This document shows positions 1,004-62,900 of a stretch of 64,000 nucleotides of DNA, piece by piece. Numbering within the stretch: the stretch's first letter is position 1; each line of letters begins with the position of its first letter. Source of the DNA: Octopus bimaculoides (Eukaryota); NCBI RefSeq assembly GCF_001194135.2, contig NC_068984.1, positions 40,092,852-40,156,851 on the forward strand, written 5' to 3'. The translations under genes and the position numbers were made by a program. A model generated the notes under the pieces. It was given only the letters and a program-made list of their open reading frames with translations, had not been told where the DNA came from and ran no database searches.

Positions 1004-1025
1004 GTGTGTGTGTGTGTGTGTGTGT

Positions 1026-15286: not shown

Positions 15287-15324
15287 TGTCCGTCTCTGTC
15301 TGTCTCTGTCTGTCTGTCTGTCTG

Positions 15325-15387
<63 letters not shown>

Positions 15388-15434
15388 GTCTGTCTGTCTC
15401 TGTCTGTCTGTCTCTGTCTCTGTCTCTGTCTGTC

Positions 15435-15488
<54 letters not shown>
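15287..15488. repeat. Compound (TCTG)n/(TC)n microsatellite
   Basis: Directly visible. Confidence 0.95.
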
Positions 15489-15491
<3 letters not shown>

Positions 15492-19039: not shown

Positions 19040-20486
19040 AACATCTAGATACAAGAAAGACGGCCATCATTGACTGCGAACTAAAGAGGCTCAACATAGA
19101 CATTGCTGGACTGCAGGAGACAAGACTCTCCTCAAATGGCAAACTCAAAGAACAGGACTTCACCTTCTTTTGGCAGGGAAGAGATCCAGAGGAACCTCAT
19201 CAGCATGGTGTTGGCTTTGCAGTGAGAAACTCATTACTCTCCTCAATAGAACCACCATCAGGAGGCACTGAGCGTATCCTCTCTCTGTGCTTCTTAAGCT
19301 CTTCTGGCCCAGTACATCTACTGAGCATCTATGCTCCCACTCTCTACAGCTCAGAAGAGACCAAGGACCAGTTCTACAAAGATCTGAACTGTGTCATTAG
19401 AAACACACCAACCAACAAAAACATCTACCTTCTAGGAGATTTTAACGCGTGGGTGGGATCTAACCAGACTCGTGGCCCATTTGTGTTGGATATTTTGGTG
19501 TTGGCAATATGAATGACAATGGTCAGAGACTGCTTGAATTTTGCACATACCATAACCTGTGCACCACCAACACATTCTTTGCTAACAAGCCATTCCACAA
19601 AGCATCTTGGAGACATCCAAGATCTCACCAATGGCATCAATTAGATCTCGTCATCACACGAAGATCCTTTCTGAATTCTGTCCAACTGACCCATAGTTAC
19701 CACAGCGCGGATTGTGACACAGATCATTCACTAATAAGCAGCAGGGTGAGGATTCTGTTTTAAAAAATCCATCACTCCAAGAAAACAGGCTGACCACGCA
19801 TTAACACTGCCAGAACCTCAGACCCTGCACTGTGGAAACGTTTTGCTGTTTCTATCAAGGTTGTCCATCCTCCTCTGCTGAAAGTAGGTGGAATTATATC
19901 CAGGAAGCTTTGTATACCACATCAATAGATACTTTCGGCATGAATGAAAGGCATAACCCAGATCGGTTCAGTGCTAGGCTTTCAGAGTTGGAACCAGTTA
20001 TCAAAACAAAGTGTACAGCTCTGATGCAATACAAGAGTGATTTTTCTATAAGCACACTCAAAGAACTCAGAAAGGCAAGAAGTAAAACCCAACTGACTGC
20101 CAGATGTTGTGCAAATAGGTATTGGCAGGAAATCTGTCAGAGTATTCAGTCAGCTGCTGACAGTGACACCATCTGTGGGATGTATGCCGGTTTGGAGAAG
20201 GCTCTTGGTCCATCCGCAACCAAGTCAGCCCTTCTGAAATCAGCTACTAGAGATCTCATCAAAGACTAAAGCAAGCAAATGGATAGATGGGTGGAGTACT
20301 ACCAGGATCTCTACTCACAGGAGACCACGGTCGCTGAAGCTGCAATCAAGGGTGTCAAGATCTTGCCAGCCATGTGCGAACGTGACAGTCTGCCACCCAT
20401 AGCAGAGCTCACCAAGGCTATTGACTCCCTGGCCAGTGGCAAGGCTCCAGGAAAAAACGGCATCCCCTCAGAGATCATCAAAGCTG
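19040..20486 (+). mobile_element. RTE-clade LINE ORF fragment: APE endonuclease plus linker, truncated before the RT core
   Basis: IDIAGLQETRL, HGVGFAVRNSLL, SIYAPTL, LGDFNA, WRHPRSHQWHQLDLVITRR, SADCDTDHSL, GKAPGKNGIPSEIIK; several frameshifts and stops. Confidence 0.92.
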
Positions 20487-21365
20487 TGCATGTATGACAG
20501 AATGTAAGCATCTTGAGAGAAAAGTTGGGCATAAGAAGCATCAGATGTGGTGTGCAACAAAGATGACTACACTAGTATGGTCATGTGATGTGTATGGATG
20601 AGGACAGCTGTGTAAAAAAAGTGTTGATCTCTAACTGTGGAGGGAACCTGTGGAAGAAGTAGACTCAGGAATACATGGACAAGGTGGTAAAGCATGATCT
20701 TTGAACCTTGGGCCTCACGGAGGTGATAAGTGACCGAGACCTTTGGCATTATGCCATGCTTCAGACGACCCATCAAGCCAAGAGAAATTGTAGTTGTGGC
20801 TGATACTGGTGTCATGTAACTGGCACCAGTGCTGATGGCGTTATAAAAAGTACCCACTACACTCTTGAAGTGGTTGGCTTTAGGAAGGGCATCCAGCTGT
20901 AGAAACCTTGCCAGATTAGATTGGAATCTGGTGCAGCTCTCCATCTTACCAGTTTCAGTTAAACCAACTAACCCATACCAGCATGGAAAGCAGATGCTAA
21001 ATAATGATGTGCTGGTGGCACGTAAAAAGCACCATTTGAACGTGATCATTTCCAGCTTCGCCTTACTGGCACTTGTGCAGGTGGCATGTGAACAAAACAT
21101 TGGCTGACTCCTGTGCAGGTGGCACATAAAAAGCACCATTTGAGTGTGGCCGTTGCCAGTACCGCCGGACTGGCCCTCGTGCCGGTGGCACGTAAAAAGC
21201 TCCCACTACACTCTCAGAGTGGTTGGTGTTAGGAAGGGCATCCAGCTGTAGAAACTTTGCCAGATCAGATTGGAGTCTGGTGTAGCCATCCGCTTCGCCA
21301 GTCCCTAGTCAAATCGACCAACTCATGCTAGCATGGAAAGCAGATGTTAAATGATAATGATGATT
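20485..21365 (+). mobile_element. 3' end of a second RTE family (C-terminal ORF plus duplicated 3'UTR modules ending in a GAT-rich tail)
   Basis: LREKLGIRSIRCGVQQR*LH*YGHV; homologous to 26186-26520. The 3'UTR block (...gttaggaagggcatccagctgtagaaac...gcatggaaagcagatgttaaatgat) recurs across the window. Confidence 0.85.
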
Positions 21366-21441
21366 ATATATACATATATATACATACATGCTTGCACACA
21401 TACTCAAACTCACATACCTGCACACACACACACACATACAC

Positions 21442-21501
<60 letters not shown>

Positions 21502-21975
21502 NNNNNNNNNNNNNNNNNNNNNNNNNNNNNNNNNNNNNNNNNNNNNNNNNNNNNNNNNNNNNNNNNNNNNNNNNNNNNNNNNNNNNNNNNNNNNNNNNNN
21601 NNNNNNNNNNNNNNNNNNNNNNNNNNNNNNNNNNNNNNNNNNNNNNNNNNNNNNNNNNNNNNNNNNNNNNNNNNNNNNNNNNNNNNNNNNNNNNNNNNNN
21701 NNNNNNNNNNNNNNNNNNNNNNNNNNNNNNNNNNNNNNNNNNNNNNNNNNNNNNNNNNNNNNNNNNNNNNNNNNNNNNNNNNNNNNNNNNNNNNNNNNNN
21801 NNNNNNNNNNNNNNNNNNNNNNNNNNNNNNNNNNNNNNNNNNNNNNNNNNNNNNNNNNNNNNNNNNNNNNNNNNNNNNNNNNNNNNNNNNNNNNNNNNNN
21901 NNNNNNNNNNNNNNNNNNNNNNNNNNNNNNNNNNNNNNNNNNNNNNNNNNNNNNNNNNNNNNNNNNNNNNNNNNG

Positions 21976-24789: not shown

Positions 24790-25140
24790 TGGTGCTTTGC
24801 TGTACTCAAGAAGACCCATACTTCCCAGCAGAAGTGTTAAGGCTGCTCCCCCCTGGTGAAGAGGATTGGCCTGCAAGAGTCCTCAGCCGGTGCCATGTAA
24901 AAAGTACTTTTGCTGGTGCAGTGTAAAAGTGCTCATGCCAGTGCCATGTTAAAAGCACCCAATGCACACTGTAAAGTGATTGATGTTAGGAAGGGCATCT
25001 AGCCATAGAAACCAAGCTTGATCAAACTGGAACCTGGTGCAGCTCTCTGGCTTGTCAGCTCTGGTCAAACTGTCTAACCCATGTCAGCATGAAAAATAGA
25101 TGTTAAAAGAGGAGTATGATGATGATGATGATGATGATGA
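24790..25140 (+). mobile_element. 5'-truncated RTE 3' end with (GAT)n tail
   Basis: Same 3'UTR block. Similar copies at 18130-18368, 39900-40223, 43500-43690, 49400-49688, 51140-51338 and 60170-60520. Confidence 0.75.
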
Positions 25141-25728
25141 TTAATAATAATAACAATAATACAGAAATAATCTAAAAAAATTAAAGCCTTATTATATTAT
25201 TGTTTCTCTTAATAAAAATGTAGTCTAATATATATTAAATGCACCACTAATTTTAATGAGGCAAAGTGTTTTATGGCAAATATATTTTGTATTAAAATAA
25301 TTTCTATTACTAATAGATAATGCTGTTTGATAGACATTATCTGCTAGTAGCACTCTGTCTTGATGAGAGGATTAAGTTAAAGTGCTAGTTAATGAGACCA
25401 CCTGATTAGTATTGAGACTATTACAATTTCAAATCTTTTTAAACACTCTACCTATCACTACTATCTGAATTAGATATAGACTTCTTATAAATATTCTTTT
25501 ATTGTACAGACTGTGGTGATATTTTGCTGCTTCGGTGGCCCAAGAGGGATGGGTGTTGAGAAGTAGCAATACAACAAATAGTGGTGGTTTCAAAACTCTT
25601 CCAGAAATTAGTCGAGATCTACTTAAGTATTTTTAATGGCGGTGCCCCAGCATGGCTACGGCCTCAAGTCTGAAACATATAAAAGAATAAAAGAAATGGT
25701 TGAAATTTATTGTACCTTTCACCATACA

Positions 25729-25873: not shown

Positions 25874-25904
25874 CATATGTATATATGAGTATATACATAT
25901 ATCA

Positions 25905-26520
25905 TCATAATCATCATCGTCGTTTAATGTCTGCTTTCCATGCTAGCATGGGTTGGATGATTTGACTGAGGACTGATGAACCAGATGGCTACACCAGGCT
26001 CCAATCTGATTTGGCAAGAGTTTCTANNNNNNNNNNCTACACCAGGCTCCAATCTGATTTGGCAAGAGTTTCTACAGCTGGATGCCCTTCCTAACGCCAA
26101 CCACTCAGAGAGTGTAGTGGGTGCTTTTACGTGCCACCGGCACGAAGGCCAGCAGGCGGTACTGGCAATGGCCACGCTCAAAATGGTGTACGAACAGCCA
26201 TGCTTCATGGCAGTGAAACATGGGCTGTAACTGCTGAGGACATGCGTAGGCTCACAAGGAATGAAGCCAGTATGCTCCGATGGATGTGTAATGTCAGTGT
26301 GCATACTAGACAGAGTGTAAGTACCTTGAGAGAAAAGTTGAACCTAAGGAGCATCAGCTGTGGTGTGTAAGAGAGACGTTTGCGCTGGTATGGGCATGTG
26401 GTGAGAATGGATGAGTATAGCTGTGTGAAAAAGTGCCACACCCTAGCAGTTGAGGGAAGCTGTGGAAGAGGTAGGCCCAGGAAGACCTGGGATGAGGTGG
26501 TGAGGCACGACTTTTGAACA
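25905..26520. mobile_element. RTE insertion with internal inversion: 3'UTR and tail on - (25905-26190) joined head-to-head to the C-terminal ORF on + (26186-26520)
   Basis: + strand VRTAMLHGSETWAVTAEDMRRL...WYGHVVRMDE...GRGRPRKTWDEVV; - strand 3'UTR ending in a CAT/GAT tail. Confidence 0.85.
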
Positions 26521-26986
26521 NNNNNNNNNNNNNNNNNNNNNNNNNNNNNNNNNNNNNNNNNNNNNNNNNNNNNNNNNNNNNNNNNNNNNNNNNNNNNNNN
26601 NNNNNNNNNNNNNNNNNNNNNNNNNNNNNNNNNNNNNNNNNNNNNNNNNNNNNNNNNNNNNNNNNNNNNNNNNNNNNNNNNNNNNNNNNNNNNNNNNNNN
26701 NNNNNNNNNNNNNNNNNNNNNNNNNNNNNNNNNNNNNNNNNNNNNNNNNNNNNNNNNNNNNNNNNNNNNNNNNNNNNNNNNNNNNNNNNNNNNNNNNNNN
26801 NNNNNNNNNNNNNNNNNNNNNNNNNNNNNNNNNNNNNNNNNNNNNNNNNNNNNNNNNNNNNNNNNNNNNNNNNNNNNNNNNNNNNNNNNNNNNNNNNNNN
26901 NNNNNNNNNNNNNNNNNNNNNNNNNNNNNNNNNNNNNNNNNNNNNNNNNNNNNNNNNNNNNNNNNNNNNNNNNNNNNNNNNNNNNN

Positions 26987-27032
<46 letters not shown>

Positions 27033-35887: not shown

Positions 35888-38557
35888 GTAATAACATTAA
35901 TTTATATGAAAAGTTCAATTTTTATTACTTATTGAAAAATACTATACTTTTAATATTTCATTCAACCTTAACTTCCCTTTATACTCATTATCTTCTCTTA
36001 ACTTTGATTATTATAAGGTTTAGCTATTGAGAGACAAATCTTGAGAGACAATATTTTGAAATAGTTGTAATTTTCACAGTTAGTGCTACTTGGTTAATAT
36101 GTGAAGGATTAAAGTTAAGTGGACTTGGTTATCTCTATTTGTACACATGAATTAACTTTGGTTTCCATTGAGTGGAAGGTTGGTAGAATCATTAGAACAT
36201 TTGAAAAAAATAATCTACTGTGTTTTTATCTATATTTTTTTACATGCTGAGTTTAAATCCTGCTGAGGTCCACTTTGTGTTTCATTCTTTCAGGGTTGAT
36301 AGAAAAAAGTACCAGTCAAATGCTGGGGGTTGGTGGTATTGACTAACCTCTCCCTTCAAAATTGTTGGCTTTGTGTTTAAATGAGAAATAATTATCATAA
36401 AAAAAGATTCTGAATGACATAAACAAAAATAACATCAACTAAAACAATGGCATAAATTTAAACAACATTAACAGAAATTCTAACAATATTTCTTTGCTAG
36501 CATTATAAGCCAAACTTAGGTTGAGTCTAGTCATAAAAAGAAGTATGACAGTGGTGTGCTACAACAAAGTGTGCTTCTTTTTCTGAGAATTCTCTAAGAG
36601 TGGACAAGGTGGAAGGTGATATACCTCTGCTTTGTGAAGGATGGTGGAGATTTTCACTTGCTCTCTGCTAATAGAACCCTAGGTGATATATGACGTAACA
36701 TATACTCCATTCATAGGGATAGAGCATTTGTAAGTGGCTTGGTCTTTAAAACTGAAGACTAAGCATGAAAGCAGACAGAGATGGTTCATTACACATCTAC
36801 TCTTAACACTGGTGCCTCAGTTCATGGCACAATGCAATATGAGGTTTATATTGGTTCTTGGCATATTGTCTCTTTTGCAGCATTGTGCAGGAAGGTGGTG
36901 AGCACCAAGGTGATACAGATTGACACATGGGTGGGAGAAGTCTGCTTAGACAGATAAATCCTGATCATCCACAAAGATCATGGAACAGTTCCAGATCTGC
37001 ATCCCATTGTAGGTGTTGATAGAAAAACAAGATTGGTAGGTCAGCGCTGAAAGGTCAGCTACTATATACATAGCAGTAAGAGCCATTTGAGGGTGTTCTG
37101 CCCACAGGAGCTTGAAAGGTAGAGAAAGTGAGCAACAACTGTGGCAGCAACAACAACATTAGATCACAGAAACTTTTGTTTTTGGAATGCCACCAGTGGC
37201 AGCCCTGAGGAGATCAAAATAAACCACCTTACGTTCAGTACCAGAAGATGACAATCAGAGATCCTCTACCAAGATCACAGTCCAGAGTACTATCCCATCC
37301 TTGCAAGATAAGGATTTGATGAAGTGGTAAACTGTCAAAGACAGTGAGGAGGAAATAAGATAAAGATCTGCCTTAAAAAAAGAAAGTGAAGTGGAAGAGA
37401 TGTGGAGCCTGTCTCTTTTTTTTTTTTTTGNNNNNNNNNNGGGGGGGGGGGAGGCAGAGTATAAATTTCACAATCTTTTGAATAGTTAACAAAGAACTGA
37501 TGAGCAATTTGAAAGAGCTGTTGGCAAAAATGAAAGATAATGTGCCAATTGAAGTTTCAACTATGTAGAACATGTAAGCAATAGACTGCTAATGAGAACC
37601 AAATTGAGTCTGTGAACAGTTGCACCTTAGCTACCAAGAGGATGTGGGCCCTTATTCACTATGACATCTGGGTTGCTCATGGACACATTGAAAGTTTTGT
37701 GTATATGGATATAGAGTACATGGCTGCTGAAAGTGGTCAAAGTCATGAGCTGCTTGATCAAACCCAGGTAGCAACTTCTCACTTGTCTGTGCATGGGTGG
37801 GTTACCATTGTTTTTCTTTAAATTCATTCATTCATATTTACATAATCTATTTCTGTATTATTATCTTATAATATATATGAATAGATTTTATAACATATTT
37901 TATCTCACCTCTTGTTTTTATATAACTTTTTACATCTTCACTTGTCTTCATAATCACTTTTTCTGACACATTGTTTGTATGATTAGGCTCCTATAGAATT
38001 CTTGAGAGGACTTTAGCATACAAATCACTGTTTTGTTTAGCTAAATTGCTGCAAAAAACTTTATCTGTCATGGAAACTGTTATTAACTGATAATTATGTC
38101 ATTAAATTTGAACCAACTTCTTTGAAAATTCCTGTGACATCTGGTTGCTCACAGGCTTTCTTTACATTTAAATGTAATGCTCATTTATTCACATTGTTTT
38201 GATGTGATTGTTCATTTTCATTTTTACAATGACATTGTAGGATAGGTGTGAGAGGCTAGACATGGCTGGATATGATAGGTTTAAATGCAAAAGGGTTAAC
38301 AGTTATTCATTTGTCAGATAACCATCTATTTTTTTGACAAATTTAAAAAAATTCTAAATATTAAATGATTATTAATTAAAACATCTGCTTCAGAAATAGT
38401 ACTTGTTTCTTGAAAATTATTGTACATTTTATATTTGTTTATTTTGCTTGTTACATTAATAATCCCTGTGATTATTGAACTCAATAAGTATAGAACTAGC
38501 AAAAAATATTCACAGAGTATGTATATGTCTATATACACATATATTTTTCATTTGTAG

Positions 38558-39760: not shown

Positions 39761-40193
39761 AGATTGGTCATGTTATTAGTGAATAATACAAGATAGATAA
39801 ATTTATTTGGTTTATTTGAAAAATAATCTGAATATCTCTATATAATAAAAGTTTAGATCTTTTAATCACCATCCTTTAATGTCCATTTTCCATGCTAACA
39901 AGATGTTTGTACTCAAGAAGACCCTGTACTCCACAGCAGAAGTGTTAAGGCCACTCCTTGCAAGAGTCCTGAGCTGGTGCCATGTAAAAAGCACTTGTGC
40001 TGGTGGCAAGTAAAAAGCACTTGTGCTGGTGCCATGTAAAAGTACCCAACACACTCTGTAAAGTGGTTGGTGTGAGGAAGGGCATCCGGCTGTAGAAACC
40101 ATACCAAGTTAGACTGGAGCCTGGTGCAGCTCTCCAGCTTGCCAGCTCTGGTCAAACCAGCTAACCGATGCCAGCATGGATAATGGATGTTAA

Positions 40194-40225
<32 letters not shown>

Positions 40226-43275: not shown

Positions 43276-44037
43276 CTTTTCTTTGAGAGTCTCTAATGGT
43301 TTTCTTTCTCCAACCAAGCAGGAAATTTCAATACATTATATTTTGCTTATAATATTCAGTATTCCTCTCCTCTACAGTGAAACCTGTTCTGCTCTGGTCC
43401 ATTCTCTCATACTTTTACTCATCTTTTGCCTCTCATTTCCTAGCATAAAGTTACCCCTCTGAAGGTTAGTAATCTCACAAACTGTGTGATGGCCTCACTA
43501 GTGTTGGTTATATGAAAAAAAGGCATCCAGTAAGTACTGTAAAGTGGTTGGCATTAAGAAGGGCATCCAGCCATAGAATTCATGCCAAAGCAGATGCTGG
43601 AGCATGATGCAGTTCTCAGGCCCATTGGATACTGTTAAATCTTTCAACGTATGCCAGCATGGAGGATGGATTTTATATGATGATGATGATTTGTTTTGCA
43701 GATTCTTGATGTGAAAATGTGTGTTTGTGTGTTGAAAGAGCTGTTGTATCTTGAGAGGGTTATTTTGCCAATAAGTAACACACAAACACACATTGTATGT
43801 GTTTTCTATAGGCAAAATGAGAAAATGACCCTCTCGAGTTATGCTTTGACACTTCTAGCTGAAAATGTGGAGGCAGACAAATCAGCAATTGTTAACATTT
43901 AATTCTTGAATAATGAATGCTGGTATTTGTCTCATTTAGTGTAAATGAGACAATGTCACAATGGCTAATTTGGGAAATGTTTGATCATTTATGTAACAGT
44001 AAAAATATTTTTTAACCATATAGCATTTTACTTCTAG

Positions 44038-47439: not shown

Positions 47440-47967
47440 GTTGGTTATTTTCTTGTTATGCACATGCTCTCTCTCTCTCTCTCTCCCCCCNNNNNNNNNN
47501 CCTCTCTCTCTCTCTCTCATACACATTTTAAATAATTTGGGTAACTCATTTTAAATACTGATTGAAACCTAATATTAATTACTGAAATATGCTTAAGTTT
47601 TGACAATTTATGTGATAGATGTATTGAATTTTCCTTGGAGATGTTAATAGTTTTTGTGTTTGAATTAATGGATAATATATTAGTTACAACTTTCACCAAA
47701 TATTTCACGTTTAATTGGAAACAGTTTTGGCAAAATAGTAAATATGTGGCTGTTTCATACAGAAATAGTGACATATTTGCTATTTTCCCAAAACATTTCA
47801 GTTAATAATCAAATATATGGTAGAAATCATATCTAATGTTTTGAAATAGTCTTGGGAAAATAGCAGATACCTGAGACAGAATTCATTTATTAATTACATA
47901 TAGTAAATCTAAATATCTCATGGTTGTTGTTTTAGGTGTAATTAACATTTCAATTATTAATTTGCAG

Positions 47968-49399: not shown

Positions 49400-49688
49400 T
49401 TGGCATATAATGGCTCCTGTGCAGGTGACATGTAAAATACACCATTTCGAGCGTGGCTGTTGCCAGTACCTCCTGACTGGCTTTTGTGCCGGTGGCACGT
49501 AAAAGCACCCACTACACTCTTGGAGTGGTTGGCTTTAGGAAGGGCATCCAGCTGTAGAAACTCTGCCAAATCAGATTGGAGCCTGGTGTAGCCATCTGGT
49601 TCACCAGTCCTCAGTCAAATCGCCCAACCCATGCTAGCATGGAAAGCGGACGTTAAACAATGATGATGATGATGATGATGATGATGAT
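49400..49688 (+). mobile_element. Well-preserved RTE 3'UTR copy with (GAT)n tail
   Basis: High similarity to 21137-21365 and to the reverse complement of 25905-26190. Confidence 0.8.
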
Positions 49689-49840
49689 AAAAATATCTTT
49701 ATTATTATTGTAAATTAAAAAGTAGTATCAATTCACCACTCTGCTAAAGGGGAGAAGAAGAGCTTAAAAGTTTCTTTAATTTGCATTTTGTCTGTTGTCA
49801 ACATAAAAATTCAGTAATTTTTATTTCTTTAAATTTTAAG

Positions 49841-49931
49841 GCAAATGATATTAAGAGGATGTGTGGCTTTTGCAAAACATGTTGGTCCTGCACGTCTGGA
49901 AAATGAACTCCTACCACAATGTTGGGAACAG
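49841..49931 (+). CDS. RELCH: RELCH exon, 91 nt: QMILRGCVAFAKHVGPARLENELLPQCWEQ
   Basis: ttttaag acceptor, CAG|gtaaat donor; human QMILTGCVAFARHVGPTRVEAELLPQCWEQ. Confidence 0.96.
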
Positions 49932-52326
49932 GTAAATAATGTAATAATCTTTAATGTGAGAATAGGACAATTATTTCGTTGTTATTACTGAGAGTATAAG
50001 ACAAGGGAACAATGGCCCATAGTTCATAGCTTAAACAGTTTCCACTAAGTATAAACTACTACCACTTCATGGGATAAAAGACTTGTTCTACTTCATTGCA
50101 GAGGAATAAACATAATTCCAAAATAGTGAGAAAGATTGTTCTCAATTTAATAGCTACATATCTCTCTCCTGAAATTTTTTCCTCTCTTTAAAAATGGACA
50201 TGACATGTTTTAAATCATAAATCTTAGGTCACACTCAACACAACAGTGTATGCTCTAACACCATTTTCCCTACTAAAACAGGGTTAATCTTGCAGGATAG
50301 ATGACAGGATTCTCTGATATGCCCTATCCTCTACATCTTTCCTCATTAACACCCTTGCTCAGATTTCCTCCTTCTCCGTCTTTCTCTACGTCTTTCTTGG
50401 TTTTCCTTTCCATCTTCTTCCCTCCACATTTATTTTCATCATTCCTCTCATCCAGTCACTTTCATGCTTCCTTAGTACATAACATTTTCTCCCCATTTCT
50501 CCTCACAACATCCTTCACTATTTCTATTTCCATTATACTCTGCCATTCGGTTCCTGAAACTTCTTCCATGTCCATATCAGTCTGGCCATGTAGTTGTCAA
50601 ATCTGATTCACCTTCTCCAGTCAACATGTCTCCATGTTTACAAACTAGTTTCTTACCAACGTAGGGAGAGTAAAGTGGGAGAGACAATAGTTGCTCAGGA
50701 AGGCGGGTGGATCATCTCCCTACCTTCTGATCTATTGATCTTTCCTCTTTCCTGAGTAACTTCTGTTTTTCCTGCCTTACCCCCTCTCCATATTGGTATT
50801 TCCCATTAACTGCACCACCACCTTTCTTCATCACTCGCTACATTCACCTTTGCCTTCCCATCTCCGACCATCTGTCACTCTCCTCTTTTACTCTTATGAA
50901 ACTACCTCCCTCTTCCTTCCCTTCATCAATCCACTGATCATACCCCCTCTCATGCTCACCTTTTTGTACCTGGAGTGTTTGCTTTGACACCCATTCACTA
51001 CCATCTTCTCCTCAACTACTCTATCTTACCCTTAGTATCCGTGTATCTCCAACACCTGACACAAAACCAATTTTCTCTCTCAAATACATCCCCTCTTACT
51101 GCATTTCTTTTTCCTTTTTCTGCTCTTTTTCTGTCTTGCAAGTCACCTGGTGATCTCATGAGAAAAGCACCCAGTATACACTGTAAAGTGGTTGGTGTTA
51201 GGAAGGGCATCCAGCCATAGAACTATACCACAGCTGACATTGGAACTTGATGCAGTCCTGTGACTCACTGGATCCTATCAAACCATCCAATCCATTCCAG
51301 CATGGGAAATGGGCATTAAATGATGATGATGATGATGACCTCTATCTTCATGCCATTTTCAAGACCCAGTTCAACATTCTTTCCATCTGCATTTCTGCTA
51401 GATTAGTTCTTTTACACCATTACATTTTTAATCTTTTTACACCATTACATATTTAATGAACCCATACAGCATATATTGTGCATTTAACAGAGTTGGTTCC
51501 AGCATGCTACCTGCACACAATACATGGCTACTTCTCTGTTCTTTCTGCATCATTACAGGCTTTACAATTTCCCATCATCTTCATCTTATGATAGCATGTC
51601 TACAATAAAACAGATTGCCATTGGAAAAAGCTACAATTTCATTATTTTGCAATTCATTTTCTTTATATTATAATATATTTCCTTATATTTTATTCCTTGT
51701 ATTATGTACATGAAGGCTCATTGTTATATTAGTTAGACAGGATGAGGATGATTATAGAGATAATTGGTGTTGTGTATCCCCAATTGGTCCTGAACAAGCA
51801 GACCTATGATCAAAGGTTTTCTGGTGTGACTATCCCATCTTTTTGTATATCTAGGACTACATTATCCAGTACTTCCTTCCATTTTCAAGACAGTAGAATA
51901 TGATTCGATGGATATTCAGCTCCTACTTTTAGCAAGTCAAGTGACCATATAGAGGTTTACTCATGATGGTGGTGGCGACTGAAGTGGCAGTGATGGCAAT
52001 CATGATTATGCCAATCACTATGTTTTTGATGGTCATTTAACTTTGCTCATCATGAAAGGACAATTGAGAATATCCATTCTTCTTTGTAGGCTAGGATGAG
52101 ATGAAGAAGCAGGGTTTATATAATTGCTGGAATGACAGAAAAATGTTACAAGATGCGTGCATATATAATTATTAACCATGAGTTTTGCATCATCTCTTCT
52201 TCTTCTTCTTTGTCTTCGTCTTGTAGTAGTAGTAGTTTAAAATGTACTTTCATTTGACAATTTTTTCCCCATGTTTTATGTCAATCCTTTTCAAGAAATG
52301 ATTTCATCTAATGTCTTTTCTTTCAG

Positions 52327-52398
52327 ATTAGTCATAAATACTCAGAACGAAGACTCCTTGTTGCTGAAGCATGTGGTGCGCTGGCTTCATATCTTCCG
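52327..52398 (+). CDS. RELCH: RELCH exon, 72 nt: ISHKYSERRLLVAEACGALASYLP
   Basis: ttttctttcag acceptor, CCG|gtatat donor; human INHKYPERRLLVAESCGALAPYLP. Confidence 0.96.
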
Positions 52399-52599
52399 GT
52401 ATATATTTAATTAATACGTATAGATGGTTGTGAGAGAGCATGTGTGTGGAGTGGCTTTGATTAATACTCTAGAGCAGTGAGTTTCTGAGGTCCATTATCT
52501 ATGTTCAAAATTTAAAAAGACTATAATGAAAGATCAATAAGTTCTTACAATAACTAGCATATTTATCTTTAATATGTTCCAGCAGATTTTACGTTCTGA

Positions 52600-52674: not shown

Positions 52675-53734
52675 CTTCATCCTTTTGGGGGTTGATAAAA
52701 TAAATACCAATTGGGTCCCACCCATGCCAGCATGGAAGGTGGATGTTAAATGATAATGATGAGCAGTGGGGTCAATATAATCTACTACCCACCTCCACCA
52801 AAATTGCTGACTGTGTGCCAAAATTTGAAACCAATATGTTCTGGCAGATTCAAACATGAATATGTGAATTGCTGTTGTGTTTGTCACAGGAGAACAACTT
52901 CTCCTTCACAAAAAATGTGTGTTCATAACACCCTCAACCGACTTAGTGTAAAGGACTCTGGCATAACTAGTGTTTCAACATTGTTGTGTCTCATCAGCCA
53001 AAGGCACCTTAGATGAATGAATCTGACAAGAGTTTGAATGTCTTGTTTGTAATTTCAGCAGATAAACTTTTACTGATGTACACTGATACCTGCCAACTGG
53101 TGATATATCACCCTATGCATGGTGAACAGCAAGAATCTTTGACAGAATATGGCAGCAAATAGCAATCCTCAAATCTGCTGGAATGTATTAAGAATAAGTT
53201 TACAAGTCATCATTTTGATTCCTTGTATTCACCATGCATATGATGATTTAATAATTACTTAGTTACACATTTACACATACATTTACACATACCTCTGAAC
53301 TGAGAGATGAATCTGAGAAAACTAGTGTTTTGTTTTTTAATATAACCAGTTTATTGAGTATACAGACCTTTTAAAATCTTGGGAGTCTGTGGGGAAAATC
53401 CATTTAAATAAAAGGGTCTTTGAAATGTAAAGGTTTAAAATCACTACTCTAGAAAAAGTAATAACATTACAATTTACCATATTGCTCTACTTATAAATCT
53501 TGAAAACTTAACTGTATGTAAGATAATTTTGTTTAATTCAGTTGGCTCTGGCGGGTTTCTTTTTAATTTATATTTCTTAATGTTTTTGGGAATAAGCATC
53601 ACAACTTCATATTTTCCCCCTCCACCTGTAAACCTTGATGTATTATGGCAACGTAAAAAATCATTTTATTCATATAATTTACATATAGTCCAATTGTAAA
53701 AAATTATTATCTCTTTTTTTTCTGTCCATTGCAG

Positions 53735-53875
53735 AATGAAATTCGTAGTTCTCTTGTGTTGTCCATGTTGCAACAGATGTTGACTGAGGACAAGGATGAA
53801 GCTGTTCGAGAGGCTGTAGTGAAAAGTCTAGGAATTCTTTTTAGTTTTATCTGTGATACTGATAAATATGGTCAG
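53735..53875 (+). CDS. RELCH: RELCH HEAT exon, 141 nt: NEIRSSLVLSMLQQMLTEDKDEAVREAVVKSLGILFSFICDTDKYGQ
   Basis: ccattgcag acceptor, CAG|gtatgc donor; human KEIRSSLVLSMLQQMLMEDKADLVREAVIKSLG. Confidence 0.96.
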
Positions 53876-54751
53876 GTATGCCAACCATTATTTTATTTGT
53901 TTCTATATTTTATAAGTTCTAACATCTTCATCATCATCAACATTGTCATCATCATCATCATCATCTAGTGTCTATTTTTCGATGCTTGCATGGATCAGAT
54001 TGAGTTTTTCAAAGCAGATTTTCCATGACCGGATGCTCTTCTTGTCACCAACCCTCACCTGTTTCCAAGCAAGGTAATATTTCCCTATGGCCAGACATCT
54101 AGAAACAAACTTGTAAGAAGTGTTCTGTATTTTTTAAAAATTAATTATTACCAAGTAGAATAAGATATAATGATAAAACAAAAATGAAATAGCATTTTTT
54201 GTTTTGGGAAATTATATTTCCTCTGCAAAATAATTTTGAAATTAAAGTTCACAGACTAGCTCTATTCAACATGTCAGATGTGAGGCAAGCTACAAGTCAA
54301 ATGAAAAATGAAATCAGTTACATGAAAGTCAAATATTTTGTTCATTCATTGGAATGGCTGTACTTGGAATAATTCTTAACATCACTAGCCATTTAACAAA
54401 ATGCTTGAAAATATGTGTGATTTTTGAAAACATTAAAGTTTATTCTATTCATTGCTTTATTGTTACTGAGTAGAGAATTCAAGAAGGACACCAAATACTT
54501 AGCTGATTCATCTTTTAGATTTTGGAATATTAATGTAAGGAATTTATGTGAAAGCTTTCTATTTAGATGACTTGGAAGCTATTATCTTCTAAAATATTTT
54601 GCTAATCAAATTGGTTTTGGCATTTCAAAAAATTAATATAATATTCATTTAAATTACAAATCAGACTAATTTCTGTATGTGAACTCTTGTTTTCAGTTTA
54701 TTAAACTTTAAAAAAAAAAATGCTTATTTAAATTTGACTTTTATATTTCAG

Positions 54752-54916
54752 GGTTTTGAACTGCTGAAAATTTCCCTAAATGATGATTCTGAGAAAGTGT
54801 GCTGTGCAGCTCGTCAAGTGTTTCTGCCATCTTTTGCTTTGTGGGCTGTACATCTCCACAAGCTGGAGTATGAATTGCTCCACTCTTTCCTGCGAGAACT
54901 GGAGGACCTAGTTAAG
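54752..54916 (+). CDS. RELCH: RELCH HEAT exon: GFELLKISLNDDSEKVCCAARQVFLPSFALWAVHLHKLEYELLHSFLRELEDLVK (3' end uncertain: GC donor after 54916 or GT after 54910)
   Basis: tatttcag acceptor; gap-free alignment to human GFELLLSALGDPSERVVSATHQVFLPAYAAW...KIEKLLR. Confidence 0.9.
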
Positions 54917-56511: not shown

Positions 56512-56545
<34 letters not shown>

Positions 56546-56772
56546 GGGTTTAGTTCACTGGTGATCTAAATGAATACGTGTGTTGAGTAAGTGCTATAAT
56601 TGGTCATCCGTTAGGTTCCAAGTTCACGTCTGAGGCTGGAGCTAAGGATCTGTATTAGGCTTCCAAGTTAGCAGGTATATATTATATTAGAGGAAAAAGG
56701 ACAACAAAAACCAAGGCAGGATAGGTATCTCAAGTTATTTAGAATGTTTAATTAGGGTAAGGTGAATTTGAA

Positions 56773-56848
56773 GTCTTACAGCTGTTTCTGTGATATCCCA
56801 AGTGATAGGCTAGCATGTCCATACACTGGGTGATCCGTCATCAGAGAC
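56773..56848 (-). ncRNA. Minimal type I hammerhead ribozyme motif, copy 1
   Basis: Minus strand: GUCU-CUGAUGA-[cggaucaccca..26 nt..ugggauaucaca]-GAAAC-AGCU-GUA|AGAC. Palindromic stem III loop; stem II partly mismatched. Confidence 0.75.
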
Positions 56849-58117
56849 AAGGTGAGTATGTATGAAAGTCCTAGACAGGGAAATTCACAGTCTATAATGA
56901 ATAAAATAGTAGATAGAAGAATAAAGAGTAAAGCAGTAGATAGAAGAGGATAGACAGGAAAATAAAGTTCACAGTTCATCTTCCAGAGGGTATGGAGATT
57001 GGTCCATACTTCTATGAAGGTATAGCCTCTTAGGTATAATCCCGGGTAAATCCAGGCAGTATTTTGAATGTTGTGTTCATGTTGAAGGAATAGAATTAAG
57101 TGGTTAACTAGCATGAAAATGGTCCACATGGGTATATAGAGTGCAAAAGACAGTCATCATGAGAGACAGATATGGCTTGTGAGAGAGTGAATAGATGAGA
57201 GAAGGGAGAAAAGAAAGGAATGGGATAGGTGTGGGAAAGAATGAATGAGGGTGAGAGTAAAATAAAATTTTAAAAAATCAAAAAAAATAAAATGCCAGTA
57301 TTATTCTTCGTAAAGGTTGGTTAGGGGTGAGAGATCAGGCATTAAGGTTTTAGTAAAGTGGAGGAGGAAGGCATTTATGTCTATTAATTAAATAGGTTTG
57401 GTGTGGTCAGAAAAATAATTTAGTTCATTGGTCAGTAGGGATAGCTAAAAATAGAACCTAGCTTAAGGGAGTATATATAGGATAAAATACAATTAACAGG
57501 ATAAAGGATTGAAATTAAAGAATAAAAATTAAAAAAGGTTATAGATTAAAAGAATAAAAATTAGAAAAATGGAAAAAGATTATTGCAGCTAGCTAGCTTT
57601 TAAGATATCTAACTGACCCTTATGAAGAATAATGCTGGCATCTTATTTTTATTTTTGATTTTTTGATTTTTAAAAAAAAATATTTTATTAAAAAATTTTT
57701 TTAATTTTATTCTCGCCCTCATTCTGTCCCACACCTATCCCATTCCTTTCTTTTCTCTCTTTCCCCTCTCTTCTCTATTCACTCACAACCTATATCTGTC
57801 TATCATGACGTCTGTCTTTCTCACTCTATATACCCACATGGAGCATTTTCATGCTCACTAACCACTTAATTCTATCCCTTCAACATGAATGCAACATTCA
57901 AAATACTGCCTGGATTTACCTGGAATTATACCTAAGGGCCTATACCTTCATGGAAGTACGAACCAACCTCCATACCCTCTGAAAAAGATGAACTGTGAAC
58001 TTATTCTCTTGTCTGTATTCTTCTATCTACTGCTTTACTCTTTATTCTTCTATCTACTATTTTATTCCTTGTAGACTGTGTATTTCCCTGTCTAGAACTT
58101 TCATACATACTCACCTT

Positions 58118-58193
58118 GTCTCTGATGATGGAATACCCAGTGTACGGACATGCTAGCCTAAAGCTTGGGATATTCCAGAAACAACTGTAAGAC
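58118..58193 (+). ncRNA. Minimal type I hammerhead ribozyme motif, copy 2 (sense to RELCH pre-mRNA)
   Basis: GUCU(58118-21)-CUGAUGA(58122-28)-stem II UGGAAUACCCA/UGGGAUAUUCCA-GAAA(58178-81)-C-AACU-GUA(58187-89)|AGAC. Stem I GUCU/AGAC; predicted cut after 58189. Confidence 0.8.
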
Positions 58194-59172
58194 TTCAAAT
58201 TCACCTTACCCTAACTAAATATTCTAAATGACTTGAGATAGCTGTTCTGCCTTGGTTTTTGTTGTTCTTTTTCCTCTAATATAAATATATGTATATATAT
58301 ATCTGTATACGTACACAACAGGTTTCTGCACAGTGTCAGTCTATCAAATTCTATTCACATGGTATTAATCAAACCAAAGTGATTGTAGAAGAGCCATGCT
58401 TGTTCCTATTTGTGAAGTTTATATAGAGAATGGATAGTATTTAAGTCCTTGTTAATAATTGTATTCATTTGAGTTTAATAAATGGAAATTTCAATTAGTG
58501 TAGCCAATTGTTAACACAGAACTGACTATATTGAAGTCTGGTTTAATCAACTAGTTTTACAACTCATTAACATATGGAGGACACTACTGTATTTTTCAAG
58601 TGAACAAACATGAAGAAGAAAGACAATCAAAGTGTAAGTTCAGCCTAATCTGGGCAAGGGTCAAATAGTTTTACTTTTGAAATTTGACCAATGAACCCAA
58701 ACCAAATAAAAACAAAATTAAAAAAGTAAAAAACATGTACGAACAAAAAAGCTAGCTGTATCTGTTTTTTTTTTTCACTTTCACCTGTTAAAAGTTCTGT
58801 TATACATTTTACAAAAGAAATTTTAAAGTCCAGTGGACTTCATCACTGCTTTGCATTATTATTTATTATATTAATTTATTGTTAGCATCCATTTAATATT
58901 TCACAATATAGTGTTAACATTAATATTTTTCTTCATTTATTAGAATTTTTCTTTATTATTATTTTGGCCTATTCTTATTATGAAAGTAAAAAGAAATTTA
59001 TAACACTTGACAAATTTTTTTCCAAAAGGAAAATGACTTGTTGTTAGTAAATTAGTTTTCATAATTTTCATTATTTTAAAGTTCATGATAAATGGAAGTT
59101 GAGTCTTTTCTAGTTTAGAGATAGATACGTAACCACTATTTTTAGTTTAAATTCTGAGCTTACATTTTGCAG

Positions 59173-59921: not shown

Positions 59922-62900
59922 TATTTATTTTATTTTACTTATTTCAGTCATTAGATGGTGGCCATGCTGTCCTCTTCATCGATTTAACTGCTACTTTTTT
60001 TTAAGCTTGAATTGGAAACAGGTAAAGGTTGGTGACAGGAAGGATATCCAGCTATAGAAAACCTATCTCAATAAGCTCTGTCCAACTCAAGCCAAGTAAC
60101 ATATATGAACACTGACAACCCATGCAACTTATGCCAGCATGGAAATTGGATGTATGATGATGATATTTATATGTAAATGCTGGTGTCACATGACTGACAC
60201 CTGTGCTGGTGACACGTAAAATGTACCCTTTGAACATTGGGCCTCTCAGTGGCAATGATAAGTGACTGAGACCATTTGGCAATACGTCATGCTTGAGAAG
60301 ACCCAACAAGCCAAGTGAAATCATAGTTATGGCTGATGCTGGTGTCACATAAAAAAAACACCCATTACACTCTTCGAGTGGTTGGCATTAAGAAGGGCAT
60401 CCAACCATAGAAACCATGCCAAATCAGATTGGAACCTGGTGCAGCCCTCCAGCTTACCAGTTTCAGTCAAACCATCTAACCCATGTCAGCATAGATAGCT
60501 GATGCTAAATAATGATGATGGTATGTTGTCATTGCCAGCAGCTNNNNNNNNNNNNNNNNNNNNNNNNNNNNNNNNNNNNNNNNNNNNNNNNNNNNNNNNN
60601 NNNNNNNNNNNNCCTTGTTCTATTCCGCACATTCCTCCTGGATCTGACTGCAATGGAACATTATATTCATAGTGCTTTTTTCCCTTTGGGAACCACATAA
60701 AGTTACATGCAGAACAACTGATTTTCTTAACTCAGTCTATTAAGCAGCACTCTTGTGGGAATCTTCCTGATTTTAGCTAATAGAGAAATCCTTCAGTAGT
60801 TCTTGCATTCATTCTTATTACCCTTATTGTATATAGGGTGGATGCTAGCAGCCTTCCAGTCCTGTAGGATAACATCATCTTCCCAAGATTTCATCATCAA
60901 TTGCTGGATCAGTTGAATGATCGGTCGATGCACCCAGAATTGTGATGTAGTTTGCTTAAAGCATTGTAGAATATTTAGAAAGTCTATGTATTTTAAAAGG
61001 CTATAGCTATGCAGTTCGAATGCTAACTATCAATAGTAGCAATAACAAAGATATTGGCCTATTACCGTAGTAATATTTAATTAGTCCTGGACTTTCAGGT
61101 AAAATACCTTTTTTACAAAGGTATTAAGAAAGATAAAAATATCTGAATCATTTTATACATCTATTAGGTTGGCATTAGGTTTATACATCTATTAGGTTAT
61201 TGTATCTATCTACCTGTGTGTGTGTTACAGAAAAATTCCTTTTAACTGGCACACCATTGTGTTAGTGTTTGTGTGTATTACTCAAATTGTTAAGGATAGA
61301 CATGAAAGATAAACACAGTAAAAGTTCTTGGAATTATTTATTCTAAAATTCCCTTCTTCACTTTTACCAATTTTCACTTGCTTTGTTTTATTTTTTGCAT
61401 TTTTTCATGTGGCTTTCCAAAAAAAATTTTTTCATTCATTTATTGTTTGAGTTCTTGTTCACTGGGAAATTGTTTCCCCTCCAAATGTACATTGCTTTAA
61501 ATATTCAATAAACACATTTTTCTTGATTTTAAAAACAAACATCGAACATCTTTTATCTTATGCATCCCACCACCATTTTTTTCTTTAAATCAATATCTTT
61601 CATAAGGAAGGCAGCACTTCTCTGAGATGGATAATTTTCAATATAATTTTGAAATGCTTGATAGATATATCATTCATAATATTCTTTTGATTGTAATATA
61701 GATAGCAAGCAACATTTAAATAAAATTCAAATTATTCTCTCTTGCTACTCACTCATCTTCTCTTTATCTTCCTGTATCTTTTAAAATTTCTTTCTGACAA
61801 GAAAAGAAAGAAGTAGAGACTTTGATTTATATGTCTTTTAGGATGAAAAAAAAATCTTTTTGAAGTAGGCTTGTTGCCAAAAAGAAAAGGGGAAGAAATG
61901 TTCCCCCTGTCTGTGAAACATCTGCTTAACTAAGTATTAGGTAAATGGGTGACAGCATATTCAATGCATGAAGTATTAGAATGCTAAAGTAAAATATGGT
62001 GGAAGAAAGAATAGTCTACAGCTAATATTTTTTGCATTTTTTTTCCTGCCAAATATAAAAGATTATTTTGGATATATTTTTGGTGCCATCAGTAAAACAC
62101 TTCCATACTGAAACATGGTGAAAAGGTAGTGAATAAATTGCTTAATAAAAATATAGAAATGTGTATTTTTATCATCAAAAGATGGAATTGTTTACAAATT
62201 AAATAACTGAGATGTTTTTCACACAGTAGATGATATGTTGATGGATGACAGAATATCTTATGAAAAGAGCAGACTCCTTACAAAGAGTGAACACCAAACT
62301 GCTGTACAAATGAGAAAATATTCTGTTTCTTGGTTAACAGTGAAATATTTATATCTGTATTTTTGTATGGATGTGATATTGATATTTGATGTAATAGTTT
62401 TTATAATACATAGTAATAGCTTCTATTTCTCTTATATATAGTCTGGCTCCACAGTCATAGAGAAAAGATAAAATTCTAAACATTTGCACATTTTTATGCT
62501 CATTTTCCAATTGAGGAGCACTTTTTCTTTATCTCTAATCATGAATTTTTTTTTTTTTTTAAATTAAAAAATATTGTTTTGAAACAAAGAAAAATGTGTT
62601 TTAATTAAAATCTTTTAACACCTAGAATGAATTGAGATTTACACATAAATTGTAGACACGTGTCTCTTAATTAAGGACCTTCATCTATCTTAAATATCTT
62701 GTAATTATTGCTCACAGGTAGACAGTAAGTATCAGAAAGAGGTTTATATAAGAATGAGACTAAAAATTGACATGTTTCTTCAATGCTAACTGCTGTAAAG
62801 TAAATTTATTAGAGTTATAATTCGTTAAAAAAATGTAACATATTCTAGCAATGATACAAATCAAATTATTTTGAGAGGATGTTGATGAAGGAAATAGACA

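What the first reader, a model, noticed from the sequence alone, without database searches (positions are those of the whole stretch)
58118..58193. Hammerhead ribozyme on the sense strand of a RELCH intron
Seen: all conserved hammerhead core elements in type I order: stem I GUCU/AGAC, CUGAUGA, an 11-bp stem II with one bulge, GAAA, a 2-bp stem III and a GUA cleavage triplet. Established: minimal type I hammerheads with a very short stem III occur in Penelope-like elements and animal non-LTR retrozymes and cleave best as dimers; conserved intronic hammerheads are known in amniote genes such as RECK. Inference: RELCH pre-mRNA could be cut after nt 58189, ~1 kb upstream of the candidate 42-nt exon. 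Stem II is unusually long, with a 26-nt cap that can form two small sub-hairpins.
Basis: partly seen in the sequence, partly recalled or inferred. Interest (0 to 1): 0.9.

Follow-up and report, generated by a model that had tools for sequence, protein, structure and literature searches.

The report
Transposon-borne hammerhead-like motif, probably inert
The hammerhead-ribozyme consensus is really in the sequence, but it lies in one arm of a 1.6-kb inverted pair of decayed mobile-element copies inside a RELCH intron, so it is most likely a relic of a Penelope-type transposon ribozyme (or a chance look-alike) and not a device that cuts the RELCH transcript.

Summary
It is the only descriptor match in the window. 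Chance expectation is 0.067 matches per window with a loose descriptor and 0.003 with stem II of at least 7 bp.

The support stops there. No Rfam hammerhead model matches, even at E<=10. The hammerhead fold makes up 0.7% of the isolated RNA ensemble. The 10.1-11.1 pair is U-A, not G-C.

The motif lies 101 nt from the outer end of the right arm of an inverted repeat (arms 56677-57324 and 57609-58290). The left arm carries a copy with a broken stem II and no compensatory changes. A paralogous copy from a sister species, also in a head-to-head inverted pair, lacks the core (G at positions 9 and 15.1, no GUA).

Equal 5' truncation of both arms, outward 3' ends and microsatellite flanks fit a Penelope-like element insertion. 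Those elements carry minimal hammerheads near their 3' ends.

In the RELCH pre-mRNA the two arms would pair into a duplex of about 650 bp that buries the motif. Cleavage of RELCH RNA is therefore unlikely. This is an ordinary finding of low interest.

The parts
58118..58193 (+). Hammerhead-like motif, type I order, in the right arm. Stem I 58118-58121/58190-58193; CUGAUGA 58122-58128; stem II 58129-58139/58166-58177; cap 58140-58165; GAAA 58178-58181; stem III 58181-58182/58187-58188; A17 = 58189.
   Evidence: only descriptor hit in the window; the hammerhead-constrained fold is -15.2 kcal/mol against an MFE of -16.9, and makes up 0.7% of the ensemble.
56773..56848 (-). Sister copy of the motif in the left arm. 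The core, stem I, stem III and GUA are identical. The lower part of stem II is broken (C.A, G.A, A.C, U.U, C.A). Loop III is CAGCUG, a palindrome.
   Evidence: It shows 10 differences in 76 nt, none compensatory. The hammerhead fold makes up 3e-9 of the ensemble. The helix III self-duplex is -11.1 kcal/mol.
57609..58290 (+). Right arm of the inverted repeat: a 5'-truncated copy of a dispersed repeat, with its 3' end at about 58290.
   Evidence: The family also occurs in a sister species (L004).
56677..57324 (-). Left arm of the inverted repeat: the same repeat in the opposite orientation, with its 3' end at about 56677.
   Evidence: Identity is 83.7% over 688 aligned columns and 91% in the outer 284 nt.
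57325..57608 (.). 284-nt spacer between the inner (5') ends of the two arms.
58291..58320 (.). (TA)-rich stretch abutting the 3' end of the right arm. A short TATATA lies at the 3' end of the left arm, and a (TA)14 run at 56514-56542.
   Evidence: In L004 the same terminus ...TTTTTCCTYTAA is followed by CACACA.
54749..54916 (+). Nearest upstream RELCH exon, given for context. It shows that the motif is on the sense strand of the gene.

Best explanation
The motif is a passenger of a mobile element, not a host device.

A 1.6-kb insertion in a RELCH intron consists of two 5'-truncated copies of one dispersed repeat. They are joined head to head, with the 5' ends at the centre and the 3' ends pointing outward next to (TA)-rich DNA. 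This is the layout that Penelope-like elements (PLEs) leave behind. Their enzyme nicks both target strands and extends cDNA from each, and PLEs or their non-autonomous derivatives carry a minimal type I hammerhead near the 3' end.

The hammerhead-like sequence 101 nt from each outer end is therefore most likely the remnant of such a PLE-type minimal hammerhead. In the element's own tandem transcripts such a ribozyme would have acted as a dimer through a palindromic helix III.

In its present place it is inert, for three reasons. The left copy has lost stem II. The right copy has a non-palindromic helix III and no sense partner. In the RELCH pre-mRNA the right arm is zipped onto the already transcribed left arm as a duplex of about 650 bp.

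Shown: the motif, the inverted repeat, the paralogous copy, and the lack of conservation and of model support. Inferred: the PLE origin, the dimer mechanism, and inactivity in vivo.
For: - The motif is complete and is the only descriptor match in the window. Chance expectation is 0.003-0.067 per window.
- Inverted repeat: arms 56677-57324 and 57609-58290 with a 284-nt spacer.
- The repeat is dispersed. L004/L005, from a sister species whose RELCH intron is 85% identical to the window, carry a paralogous copy. It is 76% identical, has different flanks, and is again a head-to-head inverted pair, truncated at a different point (about 410 nt from the 3' end against about 680 nt here). It shares the 3' terminus ...TTTTTCCTYTAA followed by a microsatellite.
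- Literature on PLE insertions: they are 5'-truncated, often have an inverted 5'-truncated copy adjacent, carry the hammerhead near the 3' end or in the pLTR, and prefer microsatellite targets such as (TA)n (PMC8557442). A PLE protein cleaves and extends both DNA strands (PMC11167929).
- Literature on PLE minimal hammerheads: helix I of 4-5 bp, a large helix II, a tiny palindromic helix III, pairs of motifs on opposite strands, and very low activity that appears only as dimers (PMC4209133; PMC6765202).
- Helix III is palindromic in the left copy (-11.1 kcal/mol) but not in the right copy (-1.0 kcal/mol).
- The fold of 56650-58320 pairs 70 of 76 motif nt, and 594 of 682 right-arm nt, with the left arm.
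Against: - No reverse transcriptase or GIY-YIG reading frame lies in or near the repeat. The only Pfam hits on window ORFs are the endonuclease domains of an unrelated non-LTR element near 19 kb. The PLE assignment therefore rests on insertion architecture alone.
- The 10.1-11.1 pair is U-A. If the U is instead read as the usual extra nucleotide after A9, an extra A sits between C11.1 and G12. PLE hammerheads keep G10.1-C11.1.
- Stem II (11 bp plus a 26-nt cap) is far longer than the 6-8 bp described for PLE hammerheads.
- No Rfam hammerhead model matches.
- The one reliably alignable outgroup copy (L004_a) has CUGAUGG, GAAG and no GUA. The motif region is the least conserved part of the element (66-68% identity against 82-84% upstream).
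- Between the two arms, five stem II pairs differ on one side only and none is compensated.
Confidence: 0.55

Rival explanations
1. Chance look-alike. The repeat family carries a long hairpin (the 'stem II' plus its cap) for reasons of its own, for example a 3' stem-loop recognised by a reverse transcriptase. In this one lineage the flanking bases happen to spell CUGAUGA, GAAA and GUA. On this reading there never was a ribozyme.
For: - The outgroup copy L004_a keeps the 5' flank and the upper hairpin (GUGUAUGG...CCUAUCAC) but has G at position 9, G at 15.1 and no U16.1.
- The motif region evolves faster than the rest of the element.
- The A-U fourth pair of stem II in the right copy is a derived C-to-T change.
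- There is no covariation and no Rfam match at E<=10.
- 10.1-11.1 is U-A.
- Loose descriptor hits occur about once per 0.4-1 Mb of sequence, so a scan of many windows will meet good chance matches.
Against: - A match with stem II >=7 bp is expected only 0.003 times per window.
- It falls in exactly the kind of element (head-to-head 5'-truncated copies, microsatellite target) and at the position (about 100 nt from the 3' end) where real hammerheads are known.
- Core, stem I and stem III (23 nt) carry none of the 10 differences between the arms.
Confidence: 0.33
2. One reading: an active sense-strand intronic hammerhead that cuts RELCH pre-mRNA after 58189 and so affects RELCH expression or splicing.
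For: - All core nucleotides and three helices are present on the sense strand.
- Stem II is part of the MFE of the isolated RNA.
Against: - There is only one sense copy, so no dimer partner, and helix III is not self-complementary.
- The hammerhead fold is 0.7% of the monomer ensemble.
- The 3' strand of stem I competes with CUUAC at 58205-58210.
- The motif is buried in a hairpin of -979 kcal/mol with the upstream arm.
- It is no more conserved than its flanks (86.8% against 92.3%).
- PLE-type hammerheads show very low or protein-dependent activity even as dimers.
- Retrozyme-type hammerheads are depleted from introns, which suggests that active ones are selected against there (bioRxiv 10.64898/2026.07.22.740005 abstract).
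Confidence: 0.04
3. The inverted repeat is not a retroelement insertion. It is instead a foldback or long-terminal-inverted-repeat DNA transposon, or a local inverted duplication at a (TA)n tract. The hammerhead-like motif would then be an accident of its arm sequence.
For: - Two long arms have AT-rich termini, and TA-rich DNA lies on both sides.
- No coding capacity was found.
Against: - In the second locus (L004) the arms are truncated at a different internal point, while the outer terminus of the arm that reaches the 3' end (arm a) is the same. The other arm (b) stops matching the family 173 nt out. This is the pattern of 5' truncation, not of internal deletion between fixed inverted termini.
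- The terminus is followed by different microsatellites at different loci.
Confidence: 0.08

Closest known systems
Minimal type I hammerheads of Penelope-like elements (min-HHRs; Cervera & de la Pena 2014, PMC4209133)
   Same: - Type I order, a 4-bp open helix I, a long helix II and a 2-bp helix III with a 4-nt loop (palindromic in the sister copy).
- Two motifs on opposite strands close together.
- Located near the 3' end of 5'-truncated copies that lie head to head and abut microsatellite DNA.
   Different: - U-A instead of G10.1-C11.1 (or an extra A before G12).
- Stem II of 11 bp with a 26-nt cap, against 6-8 bp.
- Loop III is not palindromic in the sense copy.
- No RT/GIY-YIG ORF was found.
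- The only outgroup copy lacks the core, and no family-wide covariation could be shown.
Animal non-LTR retrozymes (Cervera & de la Pena 2020, PMC7229834; Li et al. 2026 preprint)
   Same: A type I hammerhead with a short helix III in a non-coding, apparently non-autonomous repeat. Retrozymes are proposed to derive from PLE pLTRs.
   Different: Retrozymes are direct tandem repeats of about 170-400 nt, each with a hammerhead. Here there are two inverted copies of about 650 nt and no direct tandem. Retrozymes are reported to be depleted from introns.
Conserved intronic hammerheads of amniotes (HH9 in RECK, HH10; Rfam RF02275 and RF02277)
   Same: A sense-strand position inside an intron of a protein-coding gene, and type I topology.
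   Different: - Those are single-copy and ultraconserved, and fold as monomers with loop-loop contacts (from my own knowledge of de la Pena & Garcia-Robles 2010).
- This motif matches neither Rfam model, is transposon-borne, and is not conserved even between its two copies.
Long inverted-repeat (hairpin) RNAs formed by paired transposon copies in introns
   Same: Two inverted copies 284 nt apart, predicted to form a duplex of about 650 bp in the pre-mRNA.
   Different: No evidence here for editing or small-RNA production. This concerns a consequence of the insertion, not the motif itself.

Membership tests
Hammerhead ribozyme (any type) | Invariant core: C3 U4 G5 A6 N7 G8 A9, G12 A13 A14, A15.1-U16.1, H17 | tested here: met
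   All are present at 58122-58128, 58178-58181 and 58188-58189, and also in the left-arm copy.
Hammerhead ribozyme (any type) | Three helices closing on the core | tested here: met
   In the right copy helix I has 4 bp, helix II 11 bp with one bulge, and helix III 2 bp. In the left copy helix II is broken.
Hammerhead ribozyme (any type) | G10.1-C11.1 pair next to the core | tested here: not met
   The pair is U58129-A58177. If U is read as an inserted base, G-C follows, but then an extra A precedes G12.
Hammerhead ribozyme (any type) | Match to a curated covariance model (Rfam Hammerhead_1, _3, _II, HH9, HH10) | tested here: not met
   No match at gathering score in the window. None at E<=10 in 58000-58300.
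Hammerhead ribozyme (any type) | Helices supported by compensatory changes among relatives | tested here: not met
   Right arm against left arm: 5 stem II pairs changed on one side and 0 compensated. L004_a lacks the 3' strand of stem II. Only 3 usable copies were available, so the test is weak.
Hammerhead ribozyme (any type) | Self-cleavage 3' of H17 | not testable with these tools
   This needs in vitro transcription or RNA-end mapping.
PLE minimal hammerhead | Short helix I (4-5 bp) without a defined loop, and a large helix II | tested here: met
   Helix I has 4 bp and cannot be extended. Helix II has 11 bp, longer than the 6-8 bp described.
PLE minimal hammerhead | Palindromic 15.2-16.2 and loop 3 (dimer formation) | tested here: inconclusive
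   Right copy ACAACUGU, self-duplex -1.0 kcal/mol. Left copy ACAGCUGU, perfect palindrome, -11.1 kcal/mol.
PLE minimal hammerhead | Lies in the pLTR or 3' region of an element with an RT + GIY-YIG ORF | tested here: inconclusive
   No such ORF lies in the repeat or the window. The copies are 5'-truncated, so the ORF would not be expected. Full-length copies could not be searched because the source genome is not in any available collection.
PLE minimal hammerhead | PLE insertion architecture: 5' truncation, adjacent inverted 5'-truncated copy, microsatellite target | tested here: met
   The window locus and the independent locus L004 both show it. The definition comes from PMC8557442 and PMC11167929.
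Non-LTR retrozyme | Direct tandem repeats of about 170-400 nt, one hammerhead per unit | tested here: not met
   There are only two copies, they are inverted, and no direct repeat of the motif exists.
Amniote conserved intronic hammerheads (HH9/HH10) | Sequence and structure match to the family, and single-copy orthologous conservation | tested here: not met
   No Rfam match. The motif is part of a dispersed repeat. Orthologous conservation could not be tested because the sister-species contigs end at 56519.

The most novel reading that the evidence does not exclude
The sense-strand copy might be a still-active minimal hammerhead whose activity is gated by the inverted repeat. It would be masked while the two arms are paired, and freed to cut RELCH pre-mRNA at 58189/58190 when the duplex is unwound or edited. 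That would be a transposon-derived conditional ribozyme in an intron.
Probability: 0.03. Interest if true: 0.6.

Novelty: new member of a known kind. Interest (0 to 1): 0.15.

Why it matters
If the main reading is right, this is one more decayed copy among the thousands of transposon-borne minimal hammerheads already described in animal genomes. It says nothing new about RELCH.

Its main value is as a caution. A perfect consensus match in an intron should be checked for repeat context and for a nearby inverted partner before a host function is proposed.

The 1.6-kb inverted repeat may matter more to the gene than the motif does. It should form a long double-stranded RNA in the pre-mRNA.

Tried and rejected
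- **Rfam.** I scanned the whole window at gathering score and 58000-58300 at E<=10. There were no hammerhead hits, only two chance hits (sR52, HOXA11-AS1_6).
- **Protein-route search for more family copies through spurious ORFs.** The 125-aa ORF across the left arm gave nothing in the word-indexed search. It gave one hit (P0046) in the exhaustive representative search. A profile of all translated copies again found only P0046. The family sample therefore stayed at two loci.
- **DNA pattern scans.** GGANNACCCAGTGTAYGGA gave 55 metagenome hits and 1 viral-contig hit. All of them match only the pattern itself.
- **Orthologous intron from relatives.** Sister-species contigs L001/L002 stop at the (TA)n tract at 56519, before the repeat. 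In L003, from a more distant relative, only exons align.
- **Naming the source organism.** Searches for the run and assembly accessions in papers and exact look-ups of two window ORFs gave nothing usable. The window has 34% G+C and CpG observed/expected of 0.20.
- **L004_b as a second outgroup.** Its alignment over the motif is unreliable (score 23), so I did not use it to infer ancestral core states.
- **Retrozyme reading.** Rejected because there is no direct tandem repeat.
- **tRNA-derived SINE.** No tRNA-like sequence was found.

Full report
**1. The observation**

The 76 bases at 58118-58193 (+) read GUCU CUGAUGA UGGAAUACCCA [26 nt] UGGGAUAUUCCA GAAA CAACUG UA AGAC.
- helix I of 4 bp;
- the C3-A9 box;
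- helix II of 11 bp with one bulged A;
- G12-A14;
- helix III of two pairs (A15.1-U16.1, C15.2-G16.2) closed by AACU;
- A17 at 58189, which puts the predicted cut between 58189 and 58190.

A descriptor I wrote (CUGANGA, helix II >=4, GAAA, U-H, helix I >=4, 0-1 extra base after A9) finds this site and nothing else on either strand.

**2. Is it more than chance?**

- In 1500 dinucleotide-preserving shuffles of the window the descriptor gave 0.067 hits per window, 0.031 with helix II >=5 and 0.0033 with helix II >=7.
- The match is therefore unlikely for this window taken alone. A gigabase genome should still hold on the order of a hundred equally good accidents, so the motif cannot carry the claim by itself.
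- No Rfam hammerhead family matches at gathering score, or at E<=10 when only 301 bases are searched.
- The isolated RNA is no more stable than its shuffles (z = -1.1 and -0.5).
- The hammerhead-compatible fold is -15.2 kcal/mol against an MFE of -16.9, which is 0.7% of the ensemble.
- The pair that abuts the core is U-A and not the highly conserved G10.1-C11.1.

**3. Surroundings**

The motif is not in unique intronic DNA. It sits in the right arm of a large inverted repeat:
- arms at 56677-57324 and 57609-58290, with a 284-nt spacer;
- 83.7% identity over the whole arms and 91% in the outer 284 nt.

The left arm carries the same motif on the minus strand at 56773-56848. The cut site lies 101 nt from the outer end of the arm. 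Each arm has its 3' end pointing outward and abuts TA-rich simple sequence.

RELCH exons lie on the + strand at 49845-49934, 52318-52401, 53729-53875 and 54749-54916.

**4. Comparison of the two arms**

Ten of the 76 positions differ (86.8% identity), against 92.3% in the 208 flanking positions of the same ungapped register (Fisher p = 0.17).
- Five differences hit stem II pairs on one side only, and none is compensated.
- Four are in the cap and one is in loop III.
- In the left copy the lower stem II reads C.A, G-C, G.A, A.C, U.U, C.A, A-U, and the hammerhead fold is 3e-9 of the ensemble.
- The left copy has CAGCUG in helix III, a perfect palindrome (self-duplex -11.1 kcal/mol). The right copy has CAACUG (-1.0 kcal/mol).

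So neither present copy combines a sound stem II with a dimer-competent helix III. The 23 positions of core, helix I and helix III carry no difference. Given the local rate this is only a weak hint of constraint (P about 0.04-0.16, my own estimate).

**5. The repeat family**

A 125-aa accidental ORF across the left arm found one relative, P0046, among 1.84 billion representative proteins. Its contigs, L004 and L005, come from the same sequencing project as L001/L002, whose RELCH intron is 85% identical to the window. They therefore come from a sister species.

L004 holds a paralogous copy with unrelated flanks:
- 703-1111 (-) matches 58279-57874 at 76% identity;
- 1233-1395 (+) matches 57899-58059;
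- these again form a head-to-head inverted pair (arms 922-1094 and 1223-1395).

In L004 the arms are truncated about 410 nt from the 3' end, against about 680 nt in the window. The arm that reaches its 3' end has the same terminus ...TTTTTCCTYTAA, followed by CACACA in L004 and by TA repeats in the window. The same 3' end, variable 5' truncation, microsatellite junctions and inverted pairs at two independent loci are the marks of a retroelement. They do not fit a fixed-arm DNA transposon.

**6. What the outgroup says about the motif**

In L004_a the homologous stretch reads ...GUCUCCUGAUGGUGGAAAACCCAGUGUAUGGAGACGUUAACCUAUCACUCACAGAAUCCCAGAAGGCAUCCAAGGAU....
- Position 9 is G, position 15.1 is G and U16.1 is A.
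- The UGGG strand of stem II is absent.
- There is no GUA and no helix I.

Identity to the window copies is 66-68% over the motif, against 82-84% in the 166 columns upstream. The motif is therefore the least conserved part of the element.

Using L004_a to polarise the differences between the arms:
- most disruptions of stem II in the left copy are derived;
- the A-U fourth pair of stem II in the right copy is also derived (C to T);
- so is the right copy's AAAGC in the cap;
- the left copy's palindrome appears to be derived too.

The ancestor of the two arms thus had the full core and 10 of 11 stem II pairs. Whether the family as a whole had a hammerhead cannot be decided from one outgroup. 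A dead copy 17-33% diverged is expected to have lost several of the 13 core bases either way. L004_b does not align reliably over the motif, and I did not use it.

**7. Most likely nature**

Published PLE biology fits the architecture closely.
- PLE insertions are strongly 5'-truncated. They often have an inverted 5'-truncated copy immediately adjacent. They carry the hammerhead in the pLTR, near the 3' end, and favour microsatellite targets such as (TA)n (PMC8557442).
- A purified PLE protein cleaves and extends both strands of its target, unlike R2 or L1 (PMC11167929). I infer that priming from both strands would give exactly this product: two copies with outward 3' ends and inward truncated 5' ends.
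- PLE minimal hammerheads have a 4-5 bp helix I without a defined loop, a large helix II and a tiny palindromic helix III. They occur as pairs on opposite strands and cleave poorly, only as dimers or with protein (PMC4209133; PMC6765202; PMC11167929).

I therefore rate 'relic of a PLE-type minimal hammerhead carried by a truncated, inverted PLE-type insertion' as the best explanation, at 0.55.

The points against are:
- the missing RT/GIY-YIG ORF;
- the U-A closing pair;
- the very long stem II;
- the lack of the core in L004_a.

These keep 'chance look-alike on a transposon hairpin' a serious rival at 0.33.

**8. Does it cut RELCH RNA?**

Very probably not.
- The transcript contains one sense copy only, since the other copy is antisense. 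The dimer that such hammerheads need cannot form in cis, and the sense copy's helix III is not self-complementary.
- The left arm is transcribed first. In the MFE of 56650-58320 (-979 kcal/mol), 594 of 682 right-arm bases, including 70 of the 76 motif bases, pair with the left arm. The helix would already be zipping when the motif emerges from the polymerase; that last point is inference.
- In the isolated RNA, GUAAG at the cut site prefers CUUAC at 58205-58210 over helix I.
- A 2026 preprint reports that retrozyme hammerheads are depleted from introns, which is consistent with selection against active ones there.

**9. Novelty and verdict**

If real, the motif is a new but ordinary member of a known and very abundant kind. 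If not, it is an accident. Interest is 0.15.

The decisive work is a genome-wide census of the repeat and a cleavage test of monomer, dimer and whole-hairpin transcripts. None of these could be run here, because the source genome is not in any searchable collection.

Noticed in passing
window 56677-58290: The two inverted arms should fold into an imperfect RNA duplex of about 650 bp with a 284-nt loop in the RELCH pre-mRNA (MFE -979 kcal/mol for 56650-58320). That makes it a candidate substrate for RNA editing or small-RNA production. It may matter more for the gene than the hammerhead-like motif does.
   Followed up: partly
window 58012-58065 and 56894-56947: Each arm contains a 27-nt unit duplicated in tandem (TCTGTATTCTTCTATCTACTGCTTTAC / TCTTTATTCTTCTATCTACTATTTTAT, 85% alike).
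   Followed up: no
window 58128-58190: A9, the next U and the first G of stem II spell AUG. The frame runs for 20 codons (MEYPVYGHASLKLGIFQKQL) and stops at the UAA formed by U16.1, A17 and A1.1, that is, across the predicted cut site. In the Anolis PLE 'PAc' the element's ORF also starts at the beginning of stem II (PMC11167929). Here it is probably a coincidence.
   Followed up: no
window 58187-58192: The cleavage triplet and the 3' strand of helix I read GUAAGA, which also resembles a 5' splice-site core. I did not test whether it is used.
   Followed up: no
L004 922-1395 (sister-species contig, SRR11869391): A paralogous copy of the same repeat is again arranged as a head-to-head inverted pair, with shorter arms (173 nt, 77% complementary, 128-nt spacer). 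One arm stops matching the family after 173 nt and continues into a 17-nt tandem repeat (AAAACCCCTTAGAATAA x3).
   Followed up: partly
window 20846-21367, 24936-25149, 25901-26190, 40021-40224, 43543-43690, 49400-49700, 51163-51338, 60337-60520: A short interspersed repeat of about 200-260 nt occurs at least nine times in the window at 71-86% identity. Its accidental translation contains ...LQLDALPKANHFKSVVG.... ARAGORN finds no tRNA-like sequence in the window.
   Followed up: partly
window 19000-20266 (+): Remnant of a non-LTR retrotransposon. The ORFs match the apurinic-type endonuclease domain (Pfam Exo_endo_phos, E = 2.6e-7; Exo_endo_phos_2, weak).
   Followed up: partly
whole window: G+C is 34% and CpG observed/expected is 0.20. 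There are very many microsatellites: (CA)n at several places, (TA)n at 56514-56542 and near 27000, and a GACA/GA-rich array at 15230-15545. There are seven runs of N (1280-1492, 21502-21974, 26027-26036, 26521-26986, 37431-37440, 47491-47500, 60544-60612). The source organism could not be named. Its RELCH exons are about 60-75% identical to fish RELCH.
   Followed up: partly
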